Shown: positions 7,747 through 33,499 of the stretch, piece by piece
How positions within the stretch are numbered: the first letter of the stretch is position 1
Layout: every line of letters starts with the position of its first letter
Source of the DNA: Adineta vaga
Lineage: Eukaryota > Animalia > Rotifera
Length of the DNA stretch: 64,000 bases
Direction of reading: 5' to 3'
Assembly: GCA_021613535.1 (NCBI GenBank)
Contig: CP075493.1
Span: 1,116,001 to 1,180,000 of the forward strand
Notes under the pieces: model-generated
Database searches by the model: none
What the model was told of the DNA's origin: nothing
Seen by the model: the letters and a program-made list of their open reading frames with translations, nothing else
Program-made: the position numbers and the translations under genes

Positions 7747-10022
7747 TCAATCGATGATTGATTTTTGATGTGATTTTGTATGCAATTGAATAAACGAGTG
7801 AAGTTTTGGTGTCAAGTACTTTTGATAGTTTAGGTTTTTGGAAGTCAATTGGGCACATCGACATTTCAGTGAGAGATGTTTACTATTTGAAAGGAGGTTT
7901 TTAACGTCGTGATCCCATGTTAGATCTACTGGATGACGTCCTGCATAGTCGACGACATCAGGATGTGCACCATAATCAAGAAGTAATTGAATGACAGGTT
8001 TTGCTACAAGAACATTTGAACAACTTGCAATAAGATGCAATGGTCGATTTCCATATCTATCAAAAACATCATTGACATCTGCTCCACATTGAATCAATAA
8101 GCAAATAACAGAAAATGTTGAAAAACTAAACAAACATTTATTTGATTAGTTTACGTTAGTTTTAAATAATCTTATATACCTGTATGAACCAGAATGTTGT
8201 GTGGTTCTTTTCTTGACAATTTCGTTGATAAAATGACTAAGAAAAGATCCTATCAGTTCCTTTCGGGCAATACGTCGTACAACAGCGATAAGAGCATATT
8301 GATCTTTTTGTGTTGTTTGCTTGGATTGTATCATCTAGAAAAAGAAAAATAGAAACATGATTTATTTTTTAATATAACTTGATGAAAATACTTACACAAA
8401 CAGCTATTTTTAAAAGATTTATATAAAGAGATAAATAACGATAATGCGCAGTTGAACTAAAACTCCAATTAATGACAGTTACTAATATATCGACCGATAC
8501 TATTTCGTCTTCGTTCCACATAAATTCTAAGTCTTCAGCTAGAGATATACATTGTTTTCTATGCAGTGCTTTTGTATCGTAGTTATCATTTTGAATTTGA
8601 AGAATCAATTGACAAGTGTGTAAACGTAACTGAAGAGATCGAAGAAACATATGATTATCACTGTAATAATTACATTGTTGTTCAATTAAAAAGAAATATA
8701 TCTCTGGATCTCCATGTTGAAGAAAAGTTCGTTCATTAACAAGTAAAGCATGCATACGCATAGCATGATTATTATCTCTTATTGATTCGAGTTGCTCTAG
8801 TGTTTGACATTCTCGACGAAAATCATATACTTCATAGAGAGTTGAATCATCTAATGAGGATTTTTCATTTAAACTTTGTGTAAAGAAATAAAATGCCATT
8901 TCAGGATTTACCATTTCAGGATCGAGAGTATATCGACAAGCTAATCGTCCTAAATCATCAATACATCGCTCAGATGGTAATAATTGAAAAAGTAAGTCTA
9001 CAATTGGTCTTAGATCACGATAAGCAGCTAACATCATTGGTGTAAAGTATTCTGCATTTGATTGCATATGTCCATGTGTATATTCGAGAAGAACTTTAAT
9101 TGTGTCAATATGTTCTTGATTTATTGCATAGTCGAGAGCAGTGTGATCTCCAAAATCTCGAATATGAGGATCAGCACCATGTTTTAAAAGACTATTTACA
9201 ATCCTGTGATAACCATGACGAGCAGCTTGATGTAATAAATAGCTATCATAATAGTTCTCAAGGTTACAATCTTGACTGAGTAGATAATCCATTAATTCTT
9301 CATTGTTTTGTTCCAGGGCGATTTTTAAGCTGTTATCTATATTAACATCTGCATGAGCTCGTTCAATGAGTTCTCGGACAAGATTGAAATCACATATTTC
9401 CGATGCATATGATAGCGGTGTTTTATATTCATATCTATAATCATAACCAATTTCAGTTTCACAATCATTAAATATCGATGGATCTAAATCGTCTGCATAG
9501 ATTTTATCTAACAATAATCGAATGCAATTTGTATGTCAAGACGAATGGCATGTGAAAGAATATTTACATTAAATTGATATTCATGGGAATACGATTCATT
9601 TGTCCAATACTTTTCTTGAGTATTGAAAACATTGATCGGTGGTAAAAGACAATCGAGAAGATCAGCATCATTAAGATCAATAGCATCACAGATTTCTCTC
9701 CATTGTGCATCTATATATTCATTTATCTCTTCCTTATCTATGTATTCATCCGAATATTCTTCATATATATCATCTCTTTCGCTTTCGAAATGATGATCAT
9801 CAAAATCAATTAATTGCTCTTTCATCCATGATCTAGCCGATCGTTGTTTTTTGTCTACTGAATATAAATAAACAAAAGTCATTGATGTGTATCTGAATTA
9901 TCGGATATTGTTACTATACCTGAGTATAAGTGTGAAGAATAAACATAACGATTTGCTCTCTCACGAATATTATGTTTGTTTTGTTGATGAAGTTGAGTAA
10001 CCTTTCGTAAATCTAAAATCAT
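7747..10022 (-). CDS. FEM1-like ankyrin-repeat substrate receptor with one apparent frameshift (~9536)
   Basis: N-terminal ankyrin repeats, RMHALL..ER segment, C-terminal ankyrin plus box-like LSLKCRCAQL...LHSFIQLH; GT-AG introns. Confidence 0.75.
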
Positions 10023-17582: not shown

Positions 17583-20500
17583 TTATCGAAGTCTATTTGA
17601 AATACGTTGAATTTCTTGTTGAACTGCTGCAATAAATGGATGTGTTGGTGATAATGTTGCATTGAAGATATCCGATGCTTTTTGAAAATTAGTTAATGCT
17701 TGTTGAAAATTATTTTGTCCATTATAAAGAAGACCAAGATTATAGTATAACATCGCTAAATCCGAATGTGTACTTGGTAAAGTTTTTTGATAAATTTTCA
17801 ATGCTTTATTATAATATTCTAATGCTTGATCAGGATAATTCAAACATAAATAAATTCCCGCAATACAATGTAAACTTGCACCTATATCTGAATGATCTTG
17901 AGGAAGATGTTTTTGTCGAATCATTAATGATTTTTGATGATATTCAAATGCTTGTTGAAATTTTCGTTCTTCTTGATAAATATTTCCAATATTATGATAA
18001 CACATGGCAACTAATAAATGATCTTCTCCAAATACTTTCTTTCGAATATTTAATGCTTTTGTAAATGATTCTAATGCATCTGTACGATTTCCTTTACGTA
18101 ATTGAACTTCACCAATACTATTATAAGTACGTGCAATGATTGGATCATCAGATTTCAATGTATGATTGTAAATGTCCAGTGCTTTATTAAACCATTGAAG
18201 ACTTTCATCATAATTTCCTTGATGATTTTTCATCATACCAAGATTATGATAACAAGCAGCTAAATCTTCATGATCATTTGGTAATTCCTTCAGTAAACGA
18301 TGATAATATTTTTCTGCTTTATCATAGTGTCCCATTTTAAAAAGAAGAACACCAAATGAAAATAGACTTGATCCTTGTTCACCTTCTCCATATTCATTCT
18401 TTATATAATCATAAATTGGTTTTAAATCATTATCATCATCACTACATAATGTCAATTGAACAACCCAAACTCGATCTTTATGTTCAATATTAACCAATCG
18501 AAAGATTGATCCTAACATAACTAAAACTTCTTGTTCATCTGTAAAAAAACTGAGTGATGTGATATTGGCAAATGGTTTTATATTCGATAGATTTGGATCG
18601 AGATCGATTTCGAAGAGAATTCGTTGAAGATCTGTTGATGCTGTTGAACTATAAAGAAATGAAAGTGCTGATCGTCGATCAACACTTGTTGAAAGGAAAG
18701 AATTCATTGAAATAAATTGTCCAATTGAATTTTTTAATGCTTGTAATTCATCATTAGATATAACTTGACCACGATAAACACGAATTGGTAATGGCGATTG
18801 TATTTCTTTTAATTGTTTTTCAAGATCACGAATAAAGAAACGAAAAAGAAATAAGAAATCAATATCCTGTGTTCGTAATGCTTTATTTAATAATCGATAG
18901 AGAAATGATTCTCTTGTATACCACCATAATGCTCGATCAGGAATATAATCTCGTTCAAATTCTTTTACAATTGTTAATTCAGTTGGATTATCTTTATAAT
19001 AATTTCGACATAAATCAATGAATTGATTTTTATCTGTAGATTTCGAAATCATATTGATAAGACAATCGATTAATAATTGACAATAAACAAATTGACCATT
19101 TAATGATGATGTTGATTGTTCTCGATTTCCATTCGATGCATTAAAAATATTGATCGAAAGATTTTCATCAACTTTATCACGAACTCGTCTTGATTGATCC
19201 AAAAGAATTTTATCGACCAGGATATTTAATTCTTTAGTTACTTCTTTAATCTAATAGGATTGTATATAGAATATGATATGTTTATTTTTAAATTGAGACT
19301 ACTAAGTTTATTTCAGAATTTTTTATAGTTCTCATTTCTGTCTTTAGTGGAGGTTCATTTCTTTTTCATGAAAAGTGTTTTGGTTATTTTGTGGGTCGAG
19401 GTTTCGCTTTTCTCACATTATATTTCTTTCTATAATGAACCTTCTCATGATAATCTCCAGTATATACTTGATTCATCTTCTTCAAGTTAATATTAGATTC
19501 ATACAACTATTATTGACATTTTGTCAGAAACTATTATGATCACTGTCATCCAATTGATTAAAAAAACGAGTTTAAAATAGCTCTAATAATAGTTATTGAT
19601 GACTTAAGTATAAGTTTACATTTTGCTATTAGATCGAATAATTCAAATCTATTTTGAACCTTTTCTAAGAGTCAATAAATCAGGTTCATGTTCTCAACAA
19701 TTTCTTTTCTATTCGCGGAAAAACTTTATAATAACAATATGGATAATACTCAACTTTGCTGATAAGATATTTGCTAGGCAATGTCATTATTGACTTTTTA
19801 TTATTAATATTCTATAGAGTTTTGTTTATTTTAATTAGCTTGGAAGTATTTTCTCCAGAAAATATAAAATGTGACATTATCTCAATTCATTTAATAAAAA
19901 TATCCGGACATATTGATAGTTTCATTATCAATCAAATTTTGTCGTATATATCATTGTTCTTCTCTTTCTAAGCGATAGGAAATAGAATAGGCGTGTACAC
20001 TCACAGATAGAACAGATCGAAAAGAACTCAAAGTTCACATGAAATTCGAATAGATTTATCAAAAGATAGATAAAGAAAACATGGATAAAGCGAAAGATCT
20101 TTCATATAAATACCATTAAGTTTAGACTTTCTTTAACAAGTCATAATTATCATATATCGCCTGAATCTTTCCTACGTTTTCGGAAGACAGCATTGTTCTT
20201 CTGGCATTTACAATATAACCGGTAAATCAAAATCTCAAACCAATCAAAACTGAATAAAACTGCAGTAAGACCTATCTATAATAGACACCATCGGAACTTC
20301 TCAAAAATGTCCACTGTAGAGAGGTGAGGTCCTCCATAAGGAAAAACTTTGGTGAACGAAGTAAATGCGTTTTCTGGACATCAGAAGATTGTTAACAAAT
20401 ACGACAGAACATTTCCATTTATCCTTACTTCCCCTTATATTAATTTTCGCTCTTGAAAGACAAATGGTTTGTTAAAAGCAGTCAAATCTGTCTCATAGAC

Positions 20501-23021: not shown

Positions 23022-24411
23022 TCAATAAGAGTACAGTTCAGCAGTACCTGCTTCCATTTCCCAATCTTTGTCACCTGTAACTAATACAGTACCATCTAGT
23101 AACACGGATGTTCTAGGTGAAACTCTGTCAAATTCCATATCGTCAGTCTGAGACCACATTTCAGTTAATGGATCGTATAATTCTGCATTTTCGAGATCTG
23201 TATTACGTACGCTTCCACCAACAACTAATACTTTTCCATTAGGAAGTAAAGCTGCACCATGTATTGCTCTTTCATTATCCATTTGACCAGTTATCGACCA
23301 ATTCCCAGTTGTTGGATCATATAATTCAGCAATTCGATAGTAATTAGTAGTTGATCTACCCGTAACCAACACTCTTCCATCTGCTAATAACGATACTTGA
23401 TGATCAAATGCTCGTCCATCGTTCATATCACTAGTGAGTGTCCATGTACCAGTTAGTGGATCATATAATTCACGTGTTTTGCTGATATTACTAAATAACG
23501 AAAACTTTTGTAAAAAAAAACAGGATTATTGATCAGAAAAAGAATTGCGTACGCATCAGGTTCACGAAAAAGTATTTGTTCTGGATTTCCACCAATTACT
23601 AACACCTTTCCATTTTTCAATACGACTGCAACATGATGACACCTTGGATAGTTCAAACTACTTGCATTCGTCCAAATTTCAGTTACTGGATCAAATAATT
23701 CAACACTATTGAGGCAATTATAACTATAAAAGGAACTCCACCAGTAACTAACACTCTTACATCGAGTAAAACAGATGCTGTGTGAGAGGCTCTTACATTA
23801 TTCATTGGATTCGTCAATGTCCAAACTTTTGTGGATGGATTGTACAATTCTGCACTATTTAAAAATTCATATCGAGCACGTCCACCAGCAACGAGTACAC
23901 TTCCGTCGTATAATACAGATGCTGTATGCTCGTATCGTATCGTAAACAAGTTCTTTGTACGTGACCAATCTAGACACACAATCAACTCATTTTTACAAAA
24001 TAATTATTGAAAGGATAAGTCGATATATGAATCATTCACATATACATCAACTCAAGATGAAAAAAAAGACAGGTCTTACGTGACTTTTTAACAGTCGTTG
24101 TAGTAGTAACTGTTGTTGTTGTTGTTGTTGTCACTAAATTGCAAAATTCATTGTATGAATTATTTAAAACTATTTTCTTTACTCGTTATTTTTGGTGGAC
24201 ATATTTGTTGATTCGTCATTGACAATGGATAACATACGGGATGATCATGACAACGAGGATGTTGAATACAGATCGTATCGTTTCGATCACAAGTATTATT
24301 GATTGAACATCGAGCATATTGAGGTATTGTTTCACATGTTTCAGATATCACTTCAATTGTTAAAAAACAACTTATAAAGGAAAAAATGAAATAATAGATT
24401 GTGTTTCTCAT
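23022..24411 (-). CDS. Secreted kelch beta-propeller protein with Cys-rich N-terminus and poly-Thr linker; one apparent frameshift (~23740)
   Basis: Signal peptide, CIQHPRC...CYP...ICPP module, six repeats of the type R..HTASVL.DG.VLV.GG...AELY.P.T..W. Confidence 0.8.
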
Positions 24412-24850
24412 CAACGATTGTTATTGAATTAACGGAATATTGAAAATGATTCTCTTCGTTATATCTCATACCTAGATTATATTTAAAGCCGTATATAATT
24501 AAATAGTAAATAATTGATATATGACCAATAAAATAAGAAGAACATACATGACAACAGAGAACGTTTTTAAAAACAATCGTCATAGATAACAAACTTATCT
24601 CTATAGTTATAATTGGTCAACGTTGATAGTTTAAAAGAAAACAATTGAATTGAATGTACAAGTCATACATAATTCGTATTTTCTTAGTTTATTTCAACAG
24701 TCTTCTACTAGTCTAAATCTGCCGTAAAAAAAGCGAATTTCTCGTGAAAGAAATTCTAATTTCTAAAATTCATATTACAAAAAGAAAGCAAGATCAATAC
24801 AAAATATATAATAAAAGTCATTTCGTTTAAATATAATCGATAGAAGTTGA

Positions 24851-27800
24851 TTAGAGAGTTGTTCCACTTGATTGATCATTTTCCACTTTTTTCGCTGATT
24901 CCTAATTGAATCAAAAAAGATAAAGAATTGAATACGTTTTCTTTTCATTACTTCGAGTTTTTTCAAAAGAACAGCAACGACCAAATTAAGAAGTACGAAT
25001 TGAGTAGAAAGAACGAAAACAACAAAATAAAGTGGTGAAATTATAGCTAATATCGAATTTTTCTTTCCATTGATTGAATCATCTTGACGTAGAGTATCCT
25101 TTGAAAGAAAAGAAAACGATTTCAATCCTTTCTTTTCTCTATAACTTACTGCCATAATTGCATTCCAATTATCTCCAGTTGCAACACGATACAATGTGAG
25201 TAGAGCAAGACCAAAATTTCCAAAATTTGCATGTTTATTCATACCCTCACAGGGTAATTCTTCTGTACATTGAATTTTTCCAAATAATTCTACACCAAGT
25301 GCAGCAAAGATAAAGAAAAGTAGGAAAAATAGAAGTGACAAATTCGCAACTTGTGGAAGAGCTTCAATAACTGTATCTATAAGTGCTTGAATACCTTTCG
25401 CCATTTTTAATAATCGTAAAACTAAAATAAAACTAATTGAAATTTTCTTTTAATTTCAAATTTATTTACTTCGTGCAATTCGTAAAAGTCTCATCGTACG
25501 AATCAATGTTGGATTTATTGGTAGAACATGTTTTCCATTCATTTTATCAATTCCAATTCCAATAATTGATAAAAATACAACAAATGCATCAAATCGATTC
25601 CAACTAAAGGTTAAATTGATAATAAAATATTAAACTAATCAACTTTTTCTGACTTATCATGAAAATATCGTGATGAACCAAGTGCGACGATTTTCCAAAG
25701 AAATTCCACGAAGAAAATCATTGTAAAAACATAATTACAATATTCAAGAACTTTTTCCAACCACTAAATGACCATAAACAAAGGATATTTATCATAAGAA
25801 AAGATCATATTTTTCATACCATTGGCATTTGATAAAATTCTACGGACATAGTTATAACATTTAAAACAATAATAACAGCAATTGCTATATCAAAATTTTT
25901 GTTTCTACATAAATTATATAGACCTTTTCGCCAGGATGAATAATCTTTGATATCTCGTAGATCACGTAATCGAAGTTGTTTACGTTCGAAATCTTTTAAA
26001 CGTTTAGCCTCAAGTCGAGCTTCTTCTTGACGATCAAGTTCTACTCGACATGATTGAAAATTCTCAACAATAACGCCAACAAATATATTGACAACAAAAA
26101 AGCCAACAGTTAAAATAAATGCGACAAAATAAAGAAATTTTCCTTCACTAAAATTCTTTTTTGGTTGCATATCAACACCAACAGCATCAATACCATTGTA
26201 CATAATGGAAACCCAAGCATCTTTGGACGATAATACAAATAATGTTAATAAAGCCTACAGAGAAATAAAAACAAGACTTGTTTTATGATAAATTGAAAAT
26301 GAATCATTACTTGAATTAAATTATCAAAATTATATTTCTGATTTATCCATACATGTTCAGGTAGATTCAAACATTCTTGTTTCGTTGAGATTGTATCAGC
26401 AAGAGAACCATCACAGTAATAGAATTTACCTTTGAACAACTAAAATTACAAAAAGATTCACTTGTATTTTATTTTGTATCATCATCAAATATTCATCTAT
26501 GATAGTTTTTCAAGTCTCTGCAATGAATGGCTTCTCAACTATAATTGAAAGTTTTCGATTTATTTTACCTGAACACCAAGAATTGCAAAGATAATAAAGA
26601 ACACCAAACAAATAATCATAACATGACCAATTGGTTTAACAGATGAGAGTAATGTTTCAATCACAAGTTTCAATCCAGGTGCACGATTAATAACTAAAAA
26701 GGAATGAAAAAGAGAAATAAGTAAAATTTCATTCATTACTTCAAACCTCTTAATGGTCGTAACGTTCTCAATAATCGAAACACTCGTAACATGCCTAAAA
26801 TATGTGATGTTGCATCGGATTCGGTCGATAAGATTTCCGTATTTTTATCTGCTATGATTAAATCTACGATTGAAATGACAACAAGAAAAGCATCCATACG
26901 ATTCCAATTATTTCGTAAATAAGTACGACGTCCAATAAACAAACCATCAGCAAGAATTTTAATAATCATTTCAATAGTAAATATCACTGTAAATACATAA
27001 TTTCCCCAAGTTAAAAATTTTCTTTCCTAAATAAATAACTTTTATATTTGACAAAAAAAAATTGAGAAGAAATTTCGATACTTACTAAACTAAGAGGTGA
27101 TATCGATGGACGTTCCATAGCAAGTGCAATGGAATTAATTCCAATACAAAGAAGAATTAATGAATCAAAAGCTTTTTCTCCAACTAAATCTTGTAATTTT
27201 ATTCGAAATCTAATTTCAGATGAAAATAATTTTTCATTGAAATACTTTTTAAAAGAATTAATTTACTTATTCGTTGGTGAAAGAAGATAAAGTGAATAGT
27301 TATGTCGTATACGAAACCATTGACATAGTTCTAATTGACAAAATGAATCCCAACAAGATGATTTAGTCTAGAAATATGTTTATTAATCATTGAATTAAAT
27401 AAATTGAATATAAAACTTACTTTTGTTTGAATATTTTTTTGATTAGATTGATCTATTTGAAGAGAATTTTGTTCATTGATTGATTGTGGCAAATCAGAAG
27501 TATATTCGAAATTTGTATAATCATTTGCTGTTTCATAACTATCTAGTGTTGTATTACCGTCTAATGAAAGTGAAATATCTTCTAATGTAGATTGATATTG
27601 AACAGATGAATTCATACTGTGTATTTCTTCCTCTTCGAGAAGATTTCCTTCTCTCGCAGTTGAATATTCTTCAGATAGAGACGGACAAGTTTGTGTTTGA
27701 TGATGTAGAATACTTCGATGTGGTTGAATATCACCTGTTATGATTGCTTCGATCTGAAAAGAAGCCTTTCATTTCTTTATACTTGTCTTTTTGATCTTAC

Positions 27801-30800
27801 TTGAAATGGATCAATTACAATTTCATTTGGATTATCTTCTTCATTTTTCTAAAATAAGTTAGTAGAATTTTTAAGTTTTGTTTTACATAAAATAATTCGA
27901 AGTTTACATCGCTAATAAAACCTTCGACAAGAATAGCAACAAAGAGATTAAGTAAAACATAATTTCCAAAGATCATCAAGCCAATAAAATATACAGCTGC
28001 CCACGAATTTGTTCTTTCCATTGCATTATATAAAACTTCATTCCAATCTTCTTGTGTTAAAATCTATTTTAAATAAACATTCTATTCATTATCTATCAAA
28101 ATTTCATGTAAATATCCTACCTGAAATACAGTTAACGATGCACTACGAAGTGAATCAAAATTGGGTCGATCTTGTGAACATATAACATCTCTCAAATTAG
28201 TTGAATTCTTTAATGAAATCACTTCCGGACATGAACAACATCGACACGTCGTTGTAAATTGTTGTCGTGATGTTCTATTAAAACCTTGAAGTATACAAAA
28301 TTGTCCACCGAATAGATGCATTCCAAGAATACTAAATCAATGAATTAAAGAGAACGAATATTTTTTCATTCAAATGATTATTATTAAATTTACCTGAAAA
28401 TGAATATGAAAAGAATTAATAATAAGAAAAATGTCGCAACATTATCCAATGTTTTAATCATAGTCATCTAAATAGAATGAAATATTTGTTAGATATTATA
28501 CTTAATTGGAATAATATAAAATAACTTACGAATTGTTTTCTTAATGTTGGTGCAAATTGAATTAATTTAAGAACACGTAATAATCGAAATGTTCGTAGAA
28601 CTGATAATCCACTATGTTGTGTACCATATAATTCAACTAAACTAATGATAACAATTGTACAATCAAAAATATTCAATGGATTTTTTATATAATTCCAACA
28701 TCCATCAGCCAGAAGTTTTAAGAACATTTCAAGTGTAAATAAAATGACAAAAACATAATTAATATATTCTAAGATATTTGTTAACGATTGAGGTTGACCA
28801 TGATATTCAACTGACATTGAAAGTGTATTTGCAATAATAGCACAAAATATTAGTAAATCAAAATATTTACTATGAACACAATATGCAATGAACTTTCGAA
28901 ATCTTTTGCATGGTAAACAATATTCTTTCTCTTGATCATGTTTGGATCGAGAATTTTTCCATAAGATTGTAAATCGTCGTTGCAAGCGCTTTATCGATCG
29001 TTCAAAATATTTGATAATCGCTTCCCAACAAGATTTTTGTTGATGACTCGAGCAAGAGAATTCATAGAACGTGAAAATCGTTTTCGTTCGGCTAACATTA
29101 ATTCTATTTCACGTTGTTTAGTAATACCAAATTGTGCTGAAATAACTGCAAGACAAATATTCATCATAAAAAATGAACCAATTATTGTTAAACAAAAAAA
29201 ATAAATCCAATCCCAAAAGGAATGAGCATCTTGAATATAATACATAATTTCAACCCAATTTTCAAGACTAATTATCTGAAGAAGAAAACCAAAGTTTTAT
29301 ATTTATCGAACATATTCAAAAGAAAACTAACTTGAAAGATTGCCAACCATGCATAGATCATATTATCAAAATGAATCGCTCCAGAAAATGGATTTTCATC
29401 GGATGTATTACAAGTTTGATAGTATTGATTCCAATTAATACAATCATGTATTGTTTGATTCGTCGATGCATTTAAACTCAGTTGACATGTAATATTATCT
29501 TGACGAAATCGAGGAATATCCGAACATTTGTTTGTTCCACTAGCTAATGAATTCGAACAAATAAATGAACGATCATCCGATGGAATATAAAATGGATGAA
29601 AAGAAAATTCTCTAAAAGAAAATCAATCAAATCAAAACAAATCATTTCTTTCACAACATACTCAATTTGATGATAATAATGATTGATTATTGAACTATTC
29701 AATTCTAAAAAACATCGATTACGTAAAACACCTTTCCATAATTGAACACCGATAATACCAAATATTGCAAAAAGAAAGAAATATAAAAGAAGAACATTGC
29801 CAAGTATTGGTAATGTATCTAATATAAGCATAACAAGAATACGCATTGATGGAATATTATTAATCGCACGTAGTGGTCGAAGTACACGAACGGTACGTAT
29901 TGCTGATAAACTTACATTATCACCTGGAAGAAACAATTCAATCCATCTAAAACGCAAACATTTGAATCGAACAAATATTTTCATCTATTCAAAACTTTAT
30001 ACCCAGTTATAACAATAAAACAATCTAATCGATTCCATGATTCAGCAAGATATGTTCCCTTTCCAATTAATCCCATTGCTATTATACGAATAAACATTTC
30101 CAATGTAAAATAAGCAAAAATACATTGATCGATTATATGAAGATAAACACAAAGTTTTGTCGTACATTTTTGCGAAGAATTGATTTCTGTTGTTGTCGAT
30201 GGACAGGGTTGATATAATCCAAGTGTAATACAATTTAATAAGATAACAAGAAGAGTTAGACGTTCAAACCATGGCCATGTAATAAGTTTTAAACATTGAT
30301 ATCGTGGAAATGTTGTTTGACGAAGACAACAAAATGCTTTTTCAATAAGACCAGGAAATGGTAAATCATTCGAATGAATCGATAAATTATCGACACTTAA
30401 AAAACAATCAGTTTCGTTAGAAGGAGATTTTTCATTGATATAATTGACTGAAATTGGTAATGAACTATGATAATTTTTCTTATCTCCCATAACTAGACGA
30501 TTATGATTCATTGATTTTGATACAGGTTTATTGACTATCAAACAATAACTATGATTTGTACAAGGTAATGTTGATGAATATCGACGAGTATCTTGTCTAT
30601 TGTCATAATTTACATGTGTATTTATCATCCATGATGAAATAATTTGTTCATTATTAATTTTCGTTACGAGTGAAGGATTTAAATTTATAAGTTCTTTTTC
30701 CATTTCATATTTCATCAATGGATTTTTTACTGTATTCGTATCATACATCAAATAAATTCGAGTTTGTGGAGCAAATAATTCGAGTTGAGATTGATATTGT

Positions 30801-31705
30801 GATTTAATCGATTGATTTAATGTCCACATAATACGTACTTGTTTCAATATATTATGATCTTGTTGATTATGTAATTCAAGATATTCTAATAAGGTTTTAA
30901 TCAACGATGGATCAATAAAAAGAAGTGTGATTTGTTTATCTTTGATAATGTTGCAGAAACGAACAATATTGAAATTACCTTCAGGTGGTAAAAGTACTAA
31001 AGTACCTGAAGGAATTGTAATTAATGGCATTAGAATTTCTAACATATGAATAATCCATGAAGTTTCAACGACTTGAAGAACTTTGTCACCATGTGTTGTT
31101 GACCATTGAATTAAATATTGTAAGTTTTCAATAAGAGATGCATGTGTATGAACAATTGCAGCTGGTCTCTTCATTATACTGGATGTAACAATGACAAAAC
31201 TTGGATTATCATCTTTAAGATTTATTGCTAAAAACCAATCAATCAAAACTTTCTTTCAAAATGCAGAAAAAAAAGTCTTACGTTTCCTGAAGATTTCTTC
31301 CACATTATCTATCAATAAAATTCGATCAATATGGATCATTGGAATTGTTCTACTGATAGTATTTGAAAATCGACGATGTGTATTTGCATGAATGAGAACA
31401 CACTGACCAGGTATTGCTTCAATTAATGTACAAATATATGAAGATGACTCAGTCGGATTTAATGGACAATATGTACCACCAACATAAAGAATTGCTAATA
31501 ATCCACATACCATTTCTAAACTACGATCAACATATTGATAAATAATTTCACCTATTTCAATATGAAGATGACCAGCGAGAGAAATAACATTCATTAATAA
31601 TTCACCATATGTCCATATTTGTTCATTTATTTCGATTGAGACTTGATTTGGAGAAGCATGTGATACTTCAAAAAACATTTCGACAATGTTTTTTGATGAT
31701 GACAT
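24851..31705 (-). CDS. T-type (Cav3) voltage-gated calcium channel alpha1 with N-terminal degenerate NRPS-type adenylation domain; multi-exon; one apparent frameshift (~29051)
   Basis: Four 6-TM repeats with intact S4 segments, pore loops SLENW/TQEDW/SKDAW/TGDNW (EEDD), Cav3 N-terminal PFPGL...WFER...NCITLG; upstream WTYGEL and [28 protein letters not shown]-binding motifs. Confidence 0.9.
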
Positions 31706-33499
31706 GATACGAAAACTCAATTCACAATCTGAAAACAAATCTACCAAATAATAAGATTCAGAAGACAATAAAACATTGGAATGGATATCTTTTCGCAACT
31801 TATCATTTTTAAAAGTACAAAAGACAGAGCACTAGTAGAATGAAATATTTCCTACACGGTTTATATTTGTGAATACAATAGAAATTAAAATCATGTTTTT
31901 CTTAATTGATAATTACATTTATAAATTCGTAATTTATTAGTTAGGGTTATCTCGTGGAAACAAAAGCGAAAAATAAATCGAAATCTTTGAAATAAAATTC
32001 TGCTATTTTCTGTTGTTAAAATATCGCTGAAAAACATGAATAAAATTTCTATAGATTTTTGTATGAATCTGTTAAGAAAAGTCGACAAAAAAAACAAGAT
32101 ACATGTGATAGATAATAGCACACAAATTTGACTGTATATCAAGGTAAACCAACAAGAATGTATAAATAAAAAACAGTTAATACTTAAAGAGAAAAAGAAA
32201 GAACGACATGTACAAGGATAATTTTCTAGATGTAAATGAAAATAAATCGATGAATGAAATCATCATTAATTGGATCAAATAAAGATATGATACTATTCAA
32301 AATTATATCGGAGTCAAGCAAAGAAAACAAGAGAAGCGAGTAATTACAATATCGTTTGAGAACGCAAGTAGGTAAATTATGAAGTTACAAAAATCTGTGC
32401 ATTATCCTCGATTCTTTCTATTTCAGATAAATTGCTCTTTGAATACATTGATGAAGACAAAGACAAAGACAAAACAAGTCAAACCATGACAATAGAAAGA
32501 GTACTGGCGAAAAATGTATTTAACGTCACAAATGATAGAGAAGACAAATAGAAATGTTCAGCTGGACAGTTATTAAAAAGAAATATGGAAATCAAATTAT
32601 TTTTGGCCAATTTAATTAATTTAAAATTAACAATCATCATCGAGAATAATCACGCGTATTAATGATTCATAAGAAAAATATTTCTTTTCATATGTTGAAT
32701 TTCGGTAGAATATGACGATACGTTTCGTGACAAGCATACGTGATTGCGAAAATAATAGAAATAGATAGGGGGAATGCAAACATGAGGTAGAGAATACAAC
32801 AATTAACAAACAGCGAAGGATTTCGAGTTGTTAAATAATTTATAAAGATGAAATATAGTGGCAACTTGTTGTTACAATACATTAGGTTCCTTTAGAAAAT
32901 TCTTTTCGTAAAACAGTTTCTTCGCTATTGTAACTCGATGCGAAGGTTTTGGAATACAAAAAATATCAATGAAACGTATTTTTTCGCTACAAAAAGACTT
33001 TGTTATTCTATTCATTGGAGTTTCGCGATAGATGGATAAAATAAGGAGAGAAAACTTCATCTTCAATCATGGATGATCGAGTGAGAAATTGATAGTTGCA
33101 AATAAATTTAGTAAAGAACTACATGTTAAAGATGGCTGCAACGAACAATATGTATTCGTAAACAAAAATGAAATGACTTCACTGCTGTCTATCCATATTA
33201 AAAATCAAATTGGTGTGTGATTTCGTGCACATAACAATCACGTTTTCAATGAGACAACGAAACGAAATTTCGTATGGAATTTTTATTTATTCCCTTTTCT
33301 GAAAGAAAGGGTTATACAGCGTTAAAATCATCGGCTTGAAATGCAAAAAGTTTGACTGTCCGGCCCATCCAGTCAGAATTCAGCAAACTGTCAAAACTGA
33401 TCTTGTGGGGTGGGTGAGGAGTAGCTAATCATTTACACACACACCCTCATCGGCTGTTTAGCATTCTTCGCTACGTTAAAGATATCATCATTCTTTTTA

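What the first reader, a model, noticed from the sequence alone, without database searches (positions are those of the whole stretch)
29981..31705. NRPS-type adenylation domain fused in frame to a complete T-type (Cav3) calcium channel
Seen: exon 1 (31705-31282) and the first part of exon 2 (31227 to ~30735) encode the large N-terminal subdomain of an AMP-binding/NRPS A domain (WTYGEL; [25 protein letters not shown]; GDKVLQ; GTLVLL; [10 protein letters not shown]; RIYLMYD). The same exon continues without stop or intron through a ~120-aa linker into the Cav3 N-terminus (LPFPGL...PWFER...[11 protein letters not shown], ~30365) and domain I S1-S3. The rest of a four-domain EEDD channel follows. 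Known: animal Cav3 channels have short enzyme-free N-termini; bdelloids carry horizontally acquired NRPS genes; enzyme-channel fusions are known in TRPM2/6/7. I know of none in Cav channels. Inference: a foreign NRPS module recruited as a cytosolic regulatory domain of a voltage-gated channel.
Basis: partly seen in the sequence, partly recalled or inferred. Interest (0 to 1): 0.95.

Follow-up and report, generated by a model that had tools for sequence, protein, structure and literature searches.

The report
Dead NRPS domain fused to calcium channel
In the rotifer Adineta vaga, and in other bdelloid rotifers, a T-type calcium channel gene is transcribed and kept in frame with a catalytically dead piece of an NRPS-type adenylation enzyme at its front end, a domain combination I found described in no paper.

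Summary
On the minus strand, exon 1 (31705-31282) and exon 2 (31227-30003) encode about 300 residues of an NRPS-type adenylation (A) domain. The frame runs on without a stop into the N-terminus and IS1-S3 of a Cav3 channel. Spliced RNA contigs confirm the 54-nt intron and carry part of the A domain, the linker and channel exons on one contig. Transcript cover starts about 40 nt before the A-domain ATG.

The genome is Adineta vaga. GenBank already models the fusion as a hypothetical protein, but I found no paper on it. It is not a one-off:
- A. ricciae has it with a 56-nt intron.
- Four unnamed contigs carry it as uninterrupted ORFs.
- Two Rotaria species have a full A gene directly upstream, with in-frame splice sites.

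In trees, the channel-linked A domains form one well-supported clade. The linked channels group together with weaker support, apart from unfused paralogues.

The A. vaga domain cannot adenylate: motif A3 is degenerate, A5 is lost and A6-A10 are absent. It still folds like an A-domain core and is under purifying selection (dN/dS 0.23; linker 0.7). The fusion probably arose when an upstream A-T gene spliced into the channel's 5' leader. Its function is untested.

Caveat: the assembled haplotype has a 1-nt frame break at 29051.

The parts
31706..31748 (-). 5' leader. RNA contigs end at 31741 (run X9) and 31745 (run X1). It holds no ATG, and no RNA cover is seen at 31877-32178.
   Evidence: tables 2 and 8
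31282..31705 (-). Exon 1: start codon (A at -3) and A-domain motifs A1 (WTYGEL) and A2 ([12 protein letters not shown]).
   Evidence: AMP-binding E 6.9e-9; RNA contig 12
31228..31281 (-). Intron 1: 54 nt, GT..AG, phase 1. It is removed in RNA.
   Evidence: table 5 (joint 31227/31282)
30740..31227 (-). Exon 2, A-domain part. It holds the degenerate A3 ([10 protein letters not shown] in place of TSGTTGRPK) and the region up to RIYLMYD, just before A5.
   Evidence: (AMP-binding profile 159-319)
30587..30739 (-). Exon 2, decayed A5-A6 stretch. It is predicted disordered and evolves almost neutrally (dN/dS 0.7).
30512..30586 (-). Exon 2, stretch [15 protein letters not shown]... It is homologous to the 5' leader of unfused Cav3 paralogues. 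A splice acceptor sits at its start in A. ricciae and Rotaria; that intron is absent here.
   Evidence: RNA contig 11 is continuous across it
30365..30511 (-). Exon 2: the ancestral Cav3 start codon (MNHNRL, 30511-30509) and the channel's own N-terminal tail.
30003..30364 (-). Exon 2: LPFPG...PWFER and domain I S1-S3.
   Evidence: Ion_trans E 1.3e-13; joint 29946/30003
24775..29946 (-). Remaining channel exons: domain I S4 to domain IV S6, with an EEDD pore. The 3' end is approximate. RNA-confirmed introns are 29947-30002, 29612-29661, 29276-29331, 28468-28529, 28332-28393, 28064-28120 and 27849-27907.
29051..29052 (-). Frame break in the assembled haplotype: one base is missing in the I-II loop. 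Runs X7 (DNA), X9 (RNA) and X2 carry the base.
   Evidence: table 4

Best explanation
This is a genuine, transcribed, evolutionarily old gene fusion in bdelloid rotifers.

Origin (inferred). An NRPS-like A-T gene lay directly upstream of one Cav3 paralogue on the same strand. Its exons became spliced onto the acceptor of the channel's 5'-leader exon, so the leader was read as protein. Rotaria still shows this layout, with introns of 0.5-1.75 kb. In Adineta and other lineages, independent in-frame deletions compacted the gene and removed the rear of the A domain. A. ricciae keeps a 56-nt intron at the junction; A. vaga has none.

Product in A. vaga (inferred). The first AUG of the transcript is the A-domain start codon. 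Translation should therefore give a four-domain T-type channel with a cytosolic N-terminal extension of about 425 residues. The extension has about 300 residues that fold like the front three quarters of an A-domain core, followed by about 125 disordered residues. The domain cannot adenylate. It is nevertheless kept by purifying selection, so it most likely acts as a non-catalytic (pseudoenzyme) module that binds something or tunes the channel's trafficking or gating.

Shown: the fusion, its transcription, its conservation, the loss of catalytic motifs, and the selection on the remnant.
Inferred: the route of origin, the translation start, and any role in the channel.
For: One frame holds both Pfam domains, and chance is excluded.

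RNA. Run X9 is spliced RNA, with eight GT..AG joints. Its contig 11 (2060 nt) joins 30003-30925 (the last 63 A-domain codons, the linker and IS1-S3) to three further channel exons. Contig 12 joins exon 1 to exon 2 and ends at 31741. Both have depth about 8. Run X1 also ends at 31745. There is no ATG in the leader, and 34 ATGs lie before the ancestral channel Met. DNA run X7 spans the whole stretch in one contig.

Conservation.
- A. ricciae P0151 has the same architecture, with a canonical 56-nt phase-1 intron.
- Uninterrupted ORFs with both domains occur in unnamed contigs: P0277, P0002, P0010 and P0013.
- Rotaria loci have the A gene directly upstream, with phase-1 donor and acceptor sites.

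Trees. Channel-linked A domains form one clade (98/90*), apart from the stand-alone A-T genes. Their channels fall in one clade (88/75), apart from the unfused clade (96/85*).

Selection, A. vaga against A. ricciae. A remnant: dN/dS 0.23 over 304 codons, pN 0.17-0.23. Channel: 0.14. First part of the linker: 0.7.

Fold. Residues 1-303 are modelled at pLDDT about 60-93 and 304-400 below 50. They superpose on NRPS A-core structures over about 305 residues at E 1e-22.

Leader origin. The same stretch carries in-frame stops in the unfused paralogue L002.
Against: - Contigs cannot show transcript starts or ends. No single contig runs from exon 1 into the channel; contigs 11 and 12 overlap by only 7 nt. 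An internal start that yields a plain channel is therefore not excluded.
- There is no protein-level evidence.
- dS is about 1, near saturation, so dN/dS values are rough. The contrast with the linker is more robust.
- The channel tree rests on 126 columns, and its key branch is not strongly supported.
- The Rotaria fusions are gene models without RNA checked here. Rotaria sp. Silwood2 is annotated as two separate genes (P0278, P0003).
- The A domain is eroded to different extents in different lineages, which would also fit a mostly dispensable leader.
- The assembled A. vaga haplotype has a frame break at 29051.
Confidence: 0.8

Rival explanations
1. Promoter and first-exon capture without a domain function. 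The channel paralogue lost its own promoter and now depends on the upstream gene's promoter and start codon. The A remnant is translated only because it lies in front. Its frame is kept open because a stop would kill the channel.
For: The frame would be preserved by selection on the channel alone. The A domain is cut back to different points in different lineages. All catalytic motifs are gone in Adineta. The only two allelic codon changes seen in the remnant are both non-synonymous.
Against: Amino-acid sequence, not just the frame, is conserved. dN/dS is 0.23 and identity 63% over 304 codons, against 0.7 and 26% in the adjoining linker. The folded core is retained. Blocks such as [15 protein letters not shown] are identical or nearly so in most fused copies.
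Confidence: 0.2
2. Two products from one locus. Besides the fused transcript, an internal promoter or internal initiation at the retained ancestral Met (30511) makes a conventional Cav3 channel, and that is the main functional form.
For: The ancestral Met and the native N-terminal tail are retained. Rotaria introns of 0.5-1.75 kb could still hold the old promoter. Contigs cannot show transcript starts.
Against: In A. vaga no non-coding DNA is left between the A domain and the Met. RNA depth is the same on both sides (7.98 and 8.1). Run X1 covers exon 1 at a depth like that of the channel exons. 34 upstream ATGs make leaky scanning unlikely.
Confidence: 0.15
3. An active enzyme-channel ('chanzyme'): the N-terminal domain still adenylates a substrate.
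For: Some Rotaria copies keep an intact A3 motif (TSGTTGRQK) and motifs A7-A10.
Against: In A. vaga and A. ricciae the A3 motif is degenerate, A5 is lost, and A6-A10, including the A10 lysine, are absent. No carrier domain is present. Every compact fusion lacks the C-terminal subdomain.
Confidence: 0.03
4. Assembly or annotation artefact that joins two neighbouring genes.
For: The public model P0001 is imperfect. It uses a mini-intron at 29051 and is truncated in domain IV.
Against: An independent DNA contig from 2013 spans the whole stretch, and spliced RNA contigs cross the junction. There is no stop between the two domains. The same junction occurs in other species and in uninterrupted ORFs.
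Confidence: 0.02

Closest known systems
Cav3 (T-type) voltage-gated calcium channels of animals
   Same: Four Ion_trans repeats, an EEDD pore and S4 arginine ladders are present. A gating-brake-like stretch ([16 protein letters not shown]) lies in the I-II loop. The best named non-rotifer match is Apis alpha-1G.
   Different: The protein carries an N-terminal extension of about 425 residues, most of it an adenylation-domain remnant. The C-terminal tail is short. Unfused paralogues in the same genome start at the ancestral Met.
NRPS adenylation domains (ANL superfamily, PF00501), and the stand-alone bdelloid A-T genes such as A. steineri P0009 and A. vaga L004/L005
   Same: There is sequence homology (Pfam 83 bits on the public model; LgrA E 8e-18). 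The A-core fold is predicted. Exon 1 and exon 2 share the same layout, and motifs A1 and A2 are kept.
   Different: The A3 P-loop is degenerate and the A5 motif is lost. The last quarter of the core, the whole C-terminal subdomain (A8-A10) and the carrier domain are missing. The remnant is joined to a membrane protein.
Channel-enzymes TRPM2 (NUDT9-H) and TRPM6/7 (alpha-kinase)
   Same: An enzyme-derived cytosolic domain is fused in one polypeptide to a cation channel. In TRPM2 the domain acts mainly as a ligand sensor with little or no catalysis (my own knowledge, not tested here).
   Different: The channel class differs (a four-domain Cav against a tetrameric TRP). The domain sits at the N- rather than the C-terminus. 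The domain probably came from horizontally acquired NRPS genes. No ligand or activity is known.
Read-through (conjoined) gene fusions that use the downstream gene's 5'-UTR acceptor
   Same: In Rotaria a donor in the upstream gene and an acceptor in front of the downstream gene's leader are phase-compatible. The former leader is translated.
   Different: Here the fusion is fixed and old. It was later compacted by in-frame deletions in several lineages.

Membership tests
NRPS adenylation domain (PF00501, ANL superfamily) | Significant match to the AMP-binding profile | tested here: met
   Exon 1 scores 35.4 bits and exon 2 scores 45.6 bits against a cut-off of 29.9. The public model P0001 scores 83.3 bits, residues 16-303 on profile 6-319 of 384.
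NRPS adenylation domain (PF00501, ANL superfamily) | A-core fold | tested here: met
   In the AlphaFold model residues 1-303 are folded. Foldseek matches teicoplanin A1, Txo1, LgrA and TycA at E about 1e-22, with about 305 aligned columns and rmsd about 3. Only about three quarters of the core is present.
NRPS adenylation domain (PF00501, ANL superfamily) | Motif A3 (TSGxTGxPK phosphate-binding loop) | tested here: not met
   A. vaga has [10 protein letters not shown] and A. ricciae has FSSDVNKRSIG. Stand-alone paralogues have TSGTTGRPK.
NRPS adenylation domain (PF00501, ANL superfamily) | Motifs A5-A10, including the C-terminal subdomain with the catalytic A10 lysine | tested here: not met
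   The alignment ends at RIYLMYD. There is no match to AMP-binding_C. The region after residue 304 is disordered.
NRPS adenylation domain (PF00501, ANL superfamily) | Carrier (PP-binding) domain as acceptor | tested here: not met
   No PP-binding match was found in P0001 or P0151. Stand-alone relatives carry the LGGSS motif.
Cav3 T-type calcium channel | Four homologous Ion_trans repeats in one polypeptide | tested here: met
   P0001 has four Ion_trans stretches. Domain IV S5-S6 lies at 24778-25404. The exon map against A. ricciae is.
Cav3 T-type calcium channel | EEDD selectivity filter | tested here: met
   Read directly from the translations: LENW, QEDW, KDAW and GDNW.
Cav3 T-type calcium channel | Closest named relatives are T-type alpha-1 subunits | tested here: met
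   The first channel exon matches Apis mellifera alpha-1G at E 1.8e-46. It clusters with other animal Cav3-like sequences.
Cav3 T-type calcium channel | Gating brake in the I-II loop, and uninterrupted reading frame | tested here: inconclusive
   A brake-like stretch is present. In the assembled haplotype a 1-nt gap at 29051 shifts the frame just before it. Runs X7, X9 and X2 are intact. Whether the stretch is a gating brake rests on my recall, not on a test.
Cav3 T-type calcium channel | Low-voltage-activated, fast-inactivating calcium current | not testable with these tools
   Needs electrophysiology.
Channel-enzymes (TRPM2/6/7 type) | Catalytically or ligand-competent enzyme domain that controls or complements the pore | not testable with these tools
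   The motif state argues against catalysis. Ligand binding is unknown.

The most novel reading that the evidence does not exclude
A domain of horizontally acquired, bacterial-type NRPS origin has been domesticated as a conserved non-catalytic N-terminal module of a core animal excitability gene across bdelloid rotifers. It may couple a small-molecule or protein signal to a T-type calcium channel. Rotaria copies with intact nucleotide-binding motifs might even be metabolite-sensing.
Probability: 0.3. Interest if true: 0.9.

Novelty: new variant of a known kind. Interest (0 to 1): 0.78.

Why it matters
To my knowledge, voltage-gated calcium channels are not known to carry enzyme-derived domains. 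Horizontally acquired genes in animals are mostly discussed as stand-alone metabolic or defence genes. Here a fragment of such a gene has been built into a four-domain ion channel, kept for a long time and held under selection.

That gives three things:
- A natural case for studying how a foreign domain is integrated into an animal signalling protein.
- A stepwise series, from neighbouring genes with splice sites, to a short intron, to a single exon, that shows how a fusion gene matures.
- A directly testable question for channel physiology: compare the full-length channel with the channel started at Met 381.

It also warns annotators of bdelloid NRPS genes that some AMP-binding hits are channel N-termini.

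Tried and rejected
I repeated it in frame.
- The genome search for a second fused copy in A. vaga found none. It found only two unfused Cav3 loci and stand-alone A genes.
- I first took MGDKKN (30490) for the ancestral start. Alignment of the upstream leaders shows that MNHNRL (30511) is the homologous Met.
- I considered that the stretch RCWSSLPSIP before the Met derives from the first helix of the carrier domain, as MAFFT aligned it. I rejected this. Rotaria exon 3 already holds that helix (SEFDxCLxDRT..G), and the same stretch has in-frame stops in the unfused paralogue L002.
- Literature searches for the fusion found nothing: bdelloid + T-type channel, rotifer + Cav3, Adineta + voltage-gated calcium channel, and the two run accessions. 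Two papers on bdelloid and animal NRPS genes do not mention channels.
- Allelic differences were too few to say anything about selection: three bases in 1.7 kb.
- The species behind the unnamed contigs (ERR3089237, ERR3089238, ERZ24986310) could not be named.
- No complex prediction was run, because no binding claim is made.
Searches used single exons by reference or the public model P0001 by id. Exons 1 and 2 were joined only inside a local script, to count ATGs and stops.
Full report
**What is in the sequence.**
On the minus strand, ORF 31256-31798 contains an ATG at 31705. ORF 29981-31246 is open for 421 codons.

I ran Pfam exon by exon.
- Exon 1 matches AMP-binding at E 6.9e-9 (profile 5-101).
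- Exon 2 matches AMP-binding at E 5.6e-12 (profile 159-319). In the same uninterrupted frame it matches Ion_trans at E 1.3e-13 (residues 317-409).

The DNA has about 28% G+C, and the stop probability is 0.079 per codon. The chance of 421 open codons is therefore about 8e-16, and none of 20,000 shuffles stayed open.

Four Ion_trans repeats follow, down to about 24775. The pore residues E, E, D, D can be read in the translations.

**Whose genome it is, and whether it is already on record.**
The assembly has 100.8 Mb in six pieces. The protein is 100% identical to the GenBank entry 'hypothetical protein I4U23_000269 [Adineta vaga]' (P0001, 1706 aa), which carries both Pfam domains. So a public gene model holds the fusion.

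Five full-text searches and two papers on bdelloid and animal NRPS genes do not mention it.

**Transcription.**
I laid four public runs on 27800-32300.
- Run X9 is spliced RNA, with eight joints that all read GT..AG on the minus strand.
- Its contig 11 (2060 nt) reads 28705-29275 / 29332-29611 / 29662-29946 / 30003-30925. One assembled transcript piece therefore carries channel exons, the whole linker and the last 63 codons of the Pfam A-domain match.
- Its contig 12 (769 nt) reads 30919-31227 / 31282-31741. This confirms the intron and places the 5' end about 36 nt before the ATG.
- Depths are 7.98 and 8.1. There is no cover at 31877-32178.
- A second run, X1, has a contig that ends at 31745.
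- DNA run X7 (2013) spans the whole stretch in one contig without joints.

The leader holds no ATG, and the start codon has A at -3. 34 ATG triplets lie before the channel's ancestral Met. A transcript from this start should therefore make only the fused protein.

The limits are these. Contigs cannot show transcript starts or ends. The two contigs overlap by only 7 nt, so no single piece runs from exon 1 into the channel.

**The A-domain part is a remnant.**
The best PDB sequence matches are all NRPS A domains: LgrA at E 8e-18, then ApnA, TycB, GrsB and GrsA.

An AlphaFold model built on 16 relatives folds residues 1-303 (pLDDT about 60-93) and leaves 304-400 below 50. Foldseek superposes the folded part on A-core structures over about 305 columns at E about 1e-22.

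In the alignment with stand-alone bdelloid A-T proteins:
- A1 (WTYGEL) and A2 are kept.
- A3 reads [10 protein letters not shown] instead of TSGTTGRPK.
- A5 is lost.
- A6-A10 and the carrier domain are absent.
- There is no AMP-binding_C or PP-binding match.

Canonical adenylation is therefore excluded for the A. vaga protein. This agrees with an earlier first-stage note on the same stretch (s1-502253).

**It is shared among bdelloids.**
A search restricted to residues 1-440 of the public model found proteins with both domains in four places:
- A. ricciae (P0151: 53% identity, 98% cover);
- Rotaria sp. Silwood1 (P0152 and P0155);
- R. socialis (P0153).

In A. ricciae, the remnant exon and the channel exon are separated by a canonical 56-nt phase-1 intron, L011 5261-5316.

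Unnamed public contigs hold uninterrupted ORFs that contain both parts.
- P0277 (479 aa, run ERR3089238): A1 to A5, then the channel.
- P0002 (267 aa), with an A-domain exon just upstream.
- P0010 (185 aa): motifs A7-A8 run straight into the channel, behind two A-domain exons.
- P0013 (258 aa): A6-A8, then the channel.

The junctions differ from contig to contig, yet each keeps the frame.

In the two Rotaria loci a complete A gene (A1-A10) lies 0.5-1.75 kb upstream on the same strand. It has a phase-1 donor, G|GTAA, at the position of the carrier-domain FxLGG motif. A phase-1 acceptor lies in front of the channel's leader. I did not check those fusions against RNA. Rotaria sp. Silwood2 is annotated as two separate genes (P0278 and P0003).

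**Congruent trees.**
On the first channel exon (126 columns), the fused or A-linked channels fall in one clade (88/75). The unfused A. vaga loci L002 and L003, A. ricciae P0280 and a Rotaria sequence form another clade (96/85*).

On the exon-2 part of the A domain (172 columns), all channel-linked A domains form one clade (98/90*). This clade is separate from the stand-alone A-T genes, including the closest A. vaga paralogues L004 and L005. The whole bdelloid family (100/99*) sits among bacterial NRPS domains.

A single old fusion or adjacency, before Adineta and Rotaria split, fits both trees. The sampling is small, and I did not test foreign origin formally.

**Selection.**
Nei-Gojobori counts between A. 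vaga and A. ricciae:

| Region | Codons | Amino-acid identity | dN/dS |
|---|---|---|---|
| A remnant | 304 | 63% | 0.23 (pN 0.17-0.23) |
| First channel exon | 119 | 76% | 0.14 |
| Linker, first part | 35 | 26% | 0.70 |
| Linker, second part | 68 | 43% | 0.31 |

dS is about 1, near saturation, so the ratios are rough. The contrast within one exon is clear, though. The remnant is conserved as a protein, not merely kept open.

**How it arose (inference).**
The stretch just before the channel's ancestral Met ([15 protein letters not shown]... here, TCRCWSSLPFIP... in Rotaria) is preceded by a splice acceptor in A. ricciae and both Rotaria species. In the unfused A. vaga paralogues L002 and L003 the homologous DNA is also present. 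L002 has in-frame stops there, and both paralogues carry an out-of-frame upstream ATG (ATGCAGCAA).

So this stretch was the 5' leader of the channel gene. Splicing from the upstream A-T gene into its acceptor turned the leader into a coding linker. Later deletions shortened the A domain and the intron: Rotaria has 0.5-1.75 kb, A. ricciae 56 nt, and A. vaga none.

**What it does (inference).**
The most likely product is a T-type channel with a folded, non-catalytic, cytosolic N-terminal domain on a disordered tether. Selection on that domain points to a role of its own, in binding, trafficking or gating. Nothing here shows which.

The main rival is that the remnant is only a translated leader left over from promoter capture. 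An additional unfused product from an internal start is also not excluded.

**A caveat outside the finding's coordinates.**
The assembled haplotype lacks one base between 29051 and 29052. The frame shifts in the I-II loop just before the brake-like stretch [16 protein letters not shown]. Runs X7 (DNA), X9 (RNA) and X2 all carry the base and read through in one frame. The public model steps over the break with a mini-intron. This is either an assembly error or a null allele; the intact allele is the one seen in RNA.

**Method notes.**
Exons 1 and 2 were joined only in a local script for counting.

**Verdict.**
It overstates the domain, which is a dead remnant and not a module, and the domain's function remains untested. 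This is a new, conserved variant of a Cav3 channel and is worth experimental follow-up.

Noticed in passing
window 29051-29052 (minus strand, I-II loop): The assembled haplotype lacks one base, which shifts the channel's frame. DNA run X7 and runs X9 and X2 carry the base and read through. The public model P0001 hides the break with a mini-intron. It is either an assembly error or a heterozygous null allele.
   Followed up: partly
L002 about 1440-1512; L003 (reverse complement) just upstream of the MDKN start; L013 about 9424-9489: The unfused Cav3 paralogues and R. socialis share a conserved 5' leader. It has an out-of-frame upstream ATG (ATGCAGCAA) whose short frame ends at or just past the main ATG, which suggests a conserved uORF. 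In the fused Adineta genes this leader is read as protein and the upstream ATG is gone.
   Followed up: partly
L017 2482-3921; L020 1003-3001 (both from run ERR3089238): One unnamed sample holds two different compact fusion loci. One has the A domain cut after A5 and the P-loop deleted. The other keeps three A-domain exons up to A8. The fused gene has therefore been duplicated, or kept in two copies, in that organism.
   Followed up: partly
window 30003-31741 against 28705-29611: Runs X7 and X9 differ from the window at only 3 bases in the 1.7 kb of A remnant and linker, but at 23 bases in 0.9 kb of channel exons. Divergence between the copies is very uneven along one gene, which might reflect a gene-conversion or loss-of-heterozygosity tract.
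   Followed up: no
window 17586-19202 (-): A single 539-aa ORF combines an NAD:arginine ADP-ribosyltransferase domain (PF01129, E 1e-7) with a long TPR array (TPR_12, E 1e-59).
   Followed up: partly
window 23025-23985 (-): Kelch-repeat exons lie directly downstream of the channel gene (Kelch_6 E 4e-13; Kelch_1 E 6e-9).
   Followed up: no
window about 24775-24940 (-): The channel's C-terminal tail after IVS6 is very short, both here and in A. ricciae. The exact last exon and stop codon in A. vaga were not settled. The public model P0001 stops early, in IVS4.
   Followed up: no
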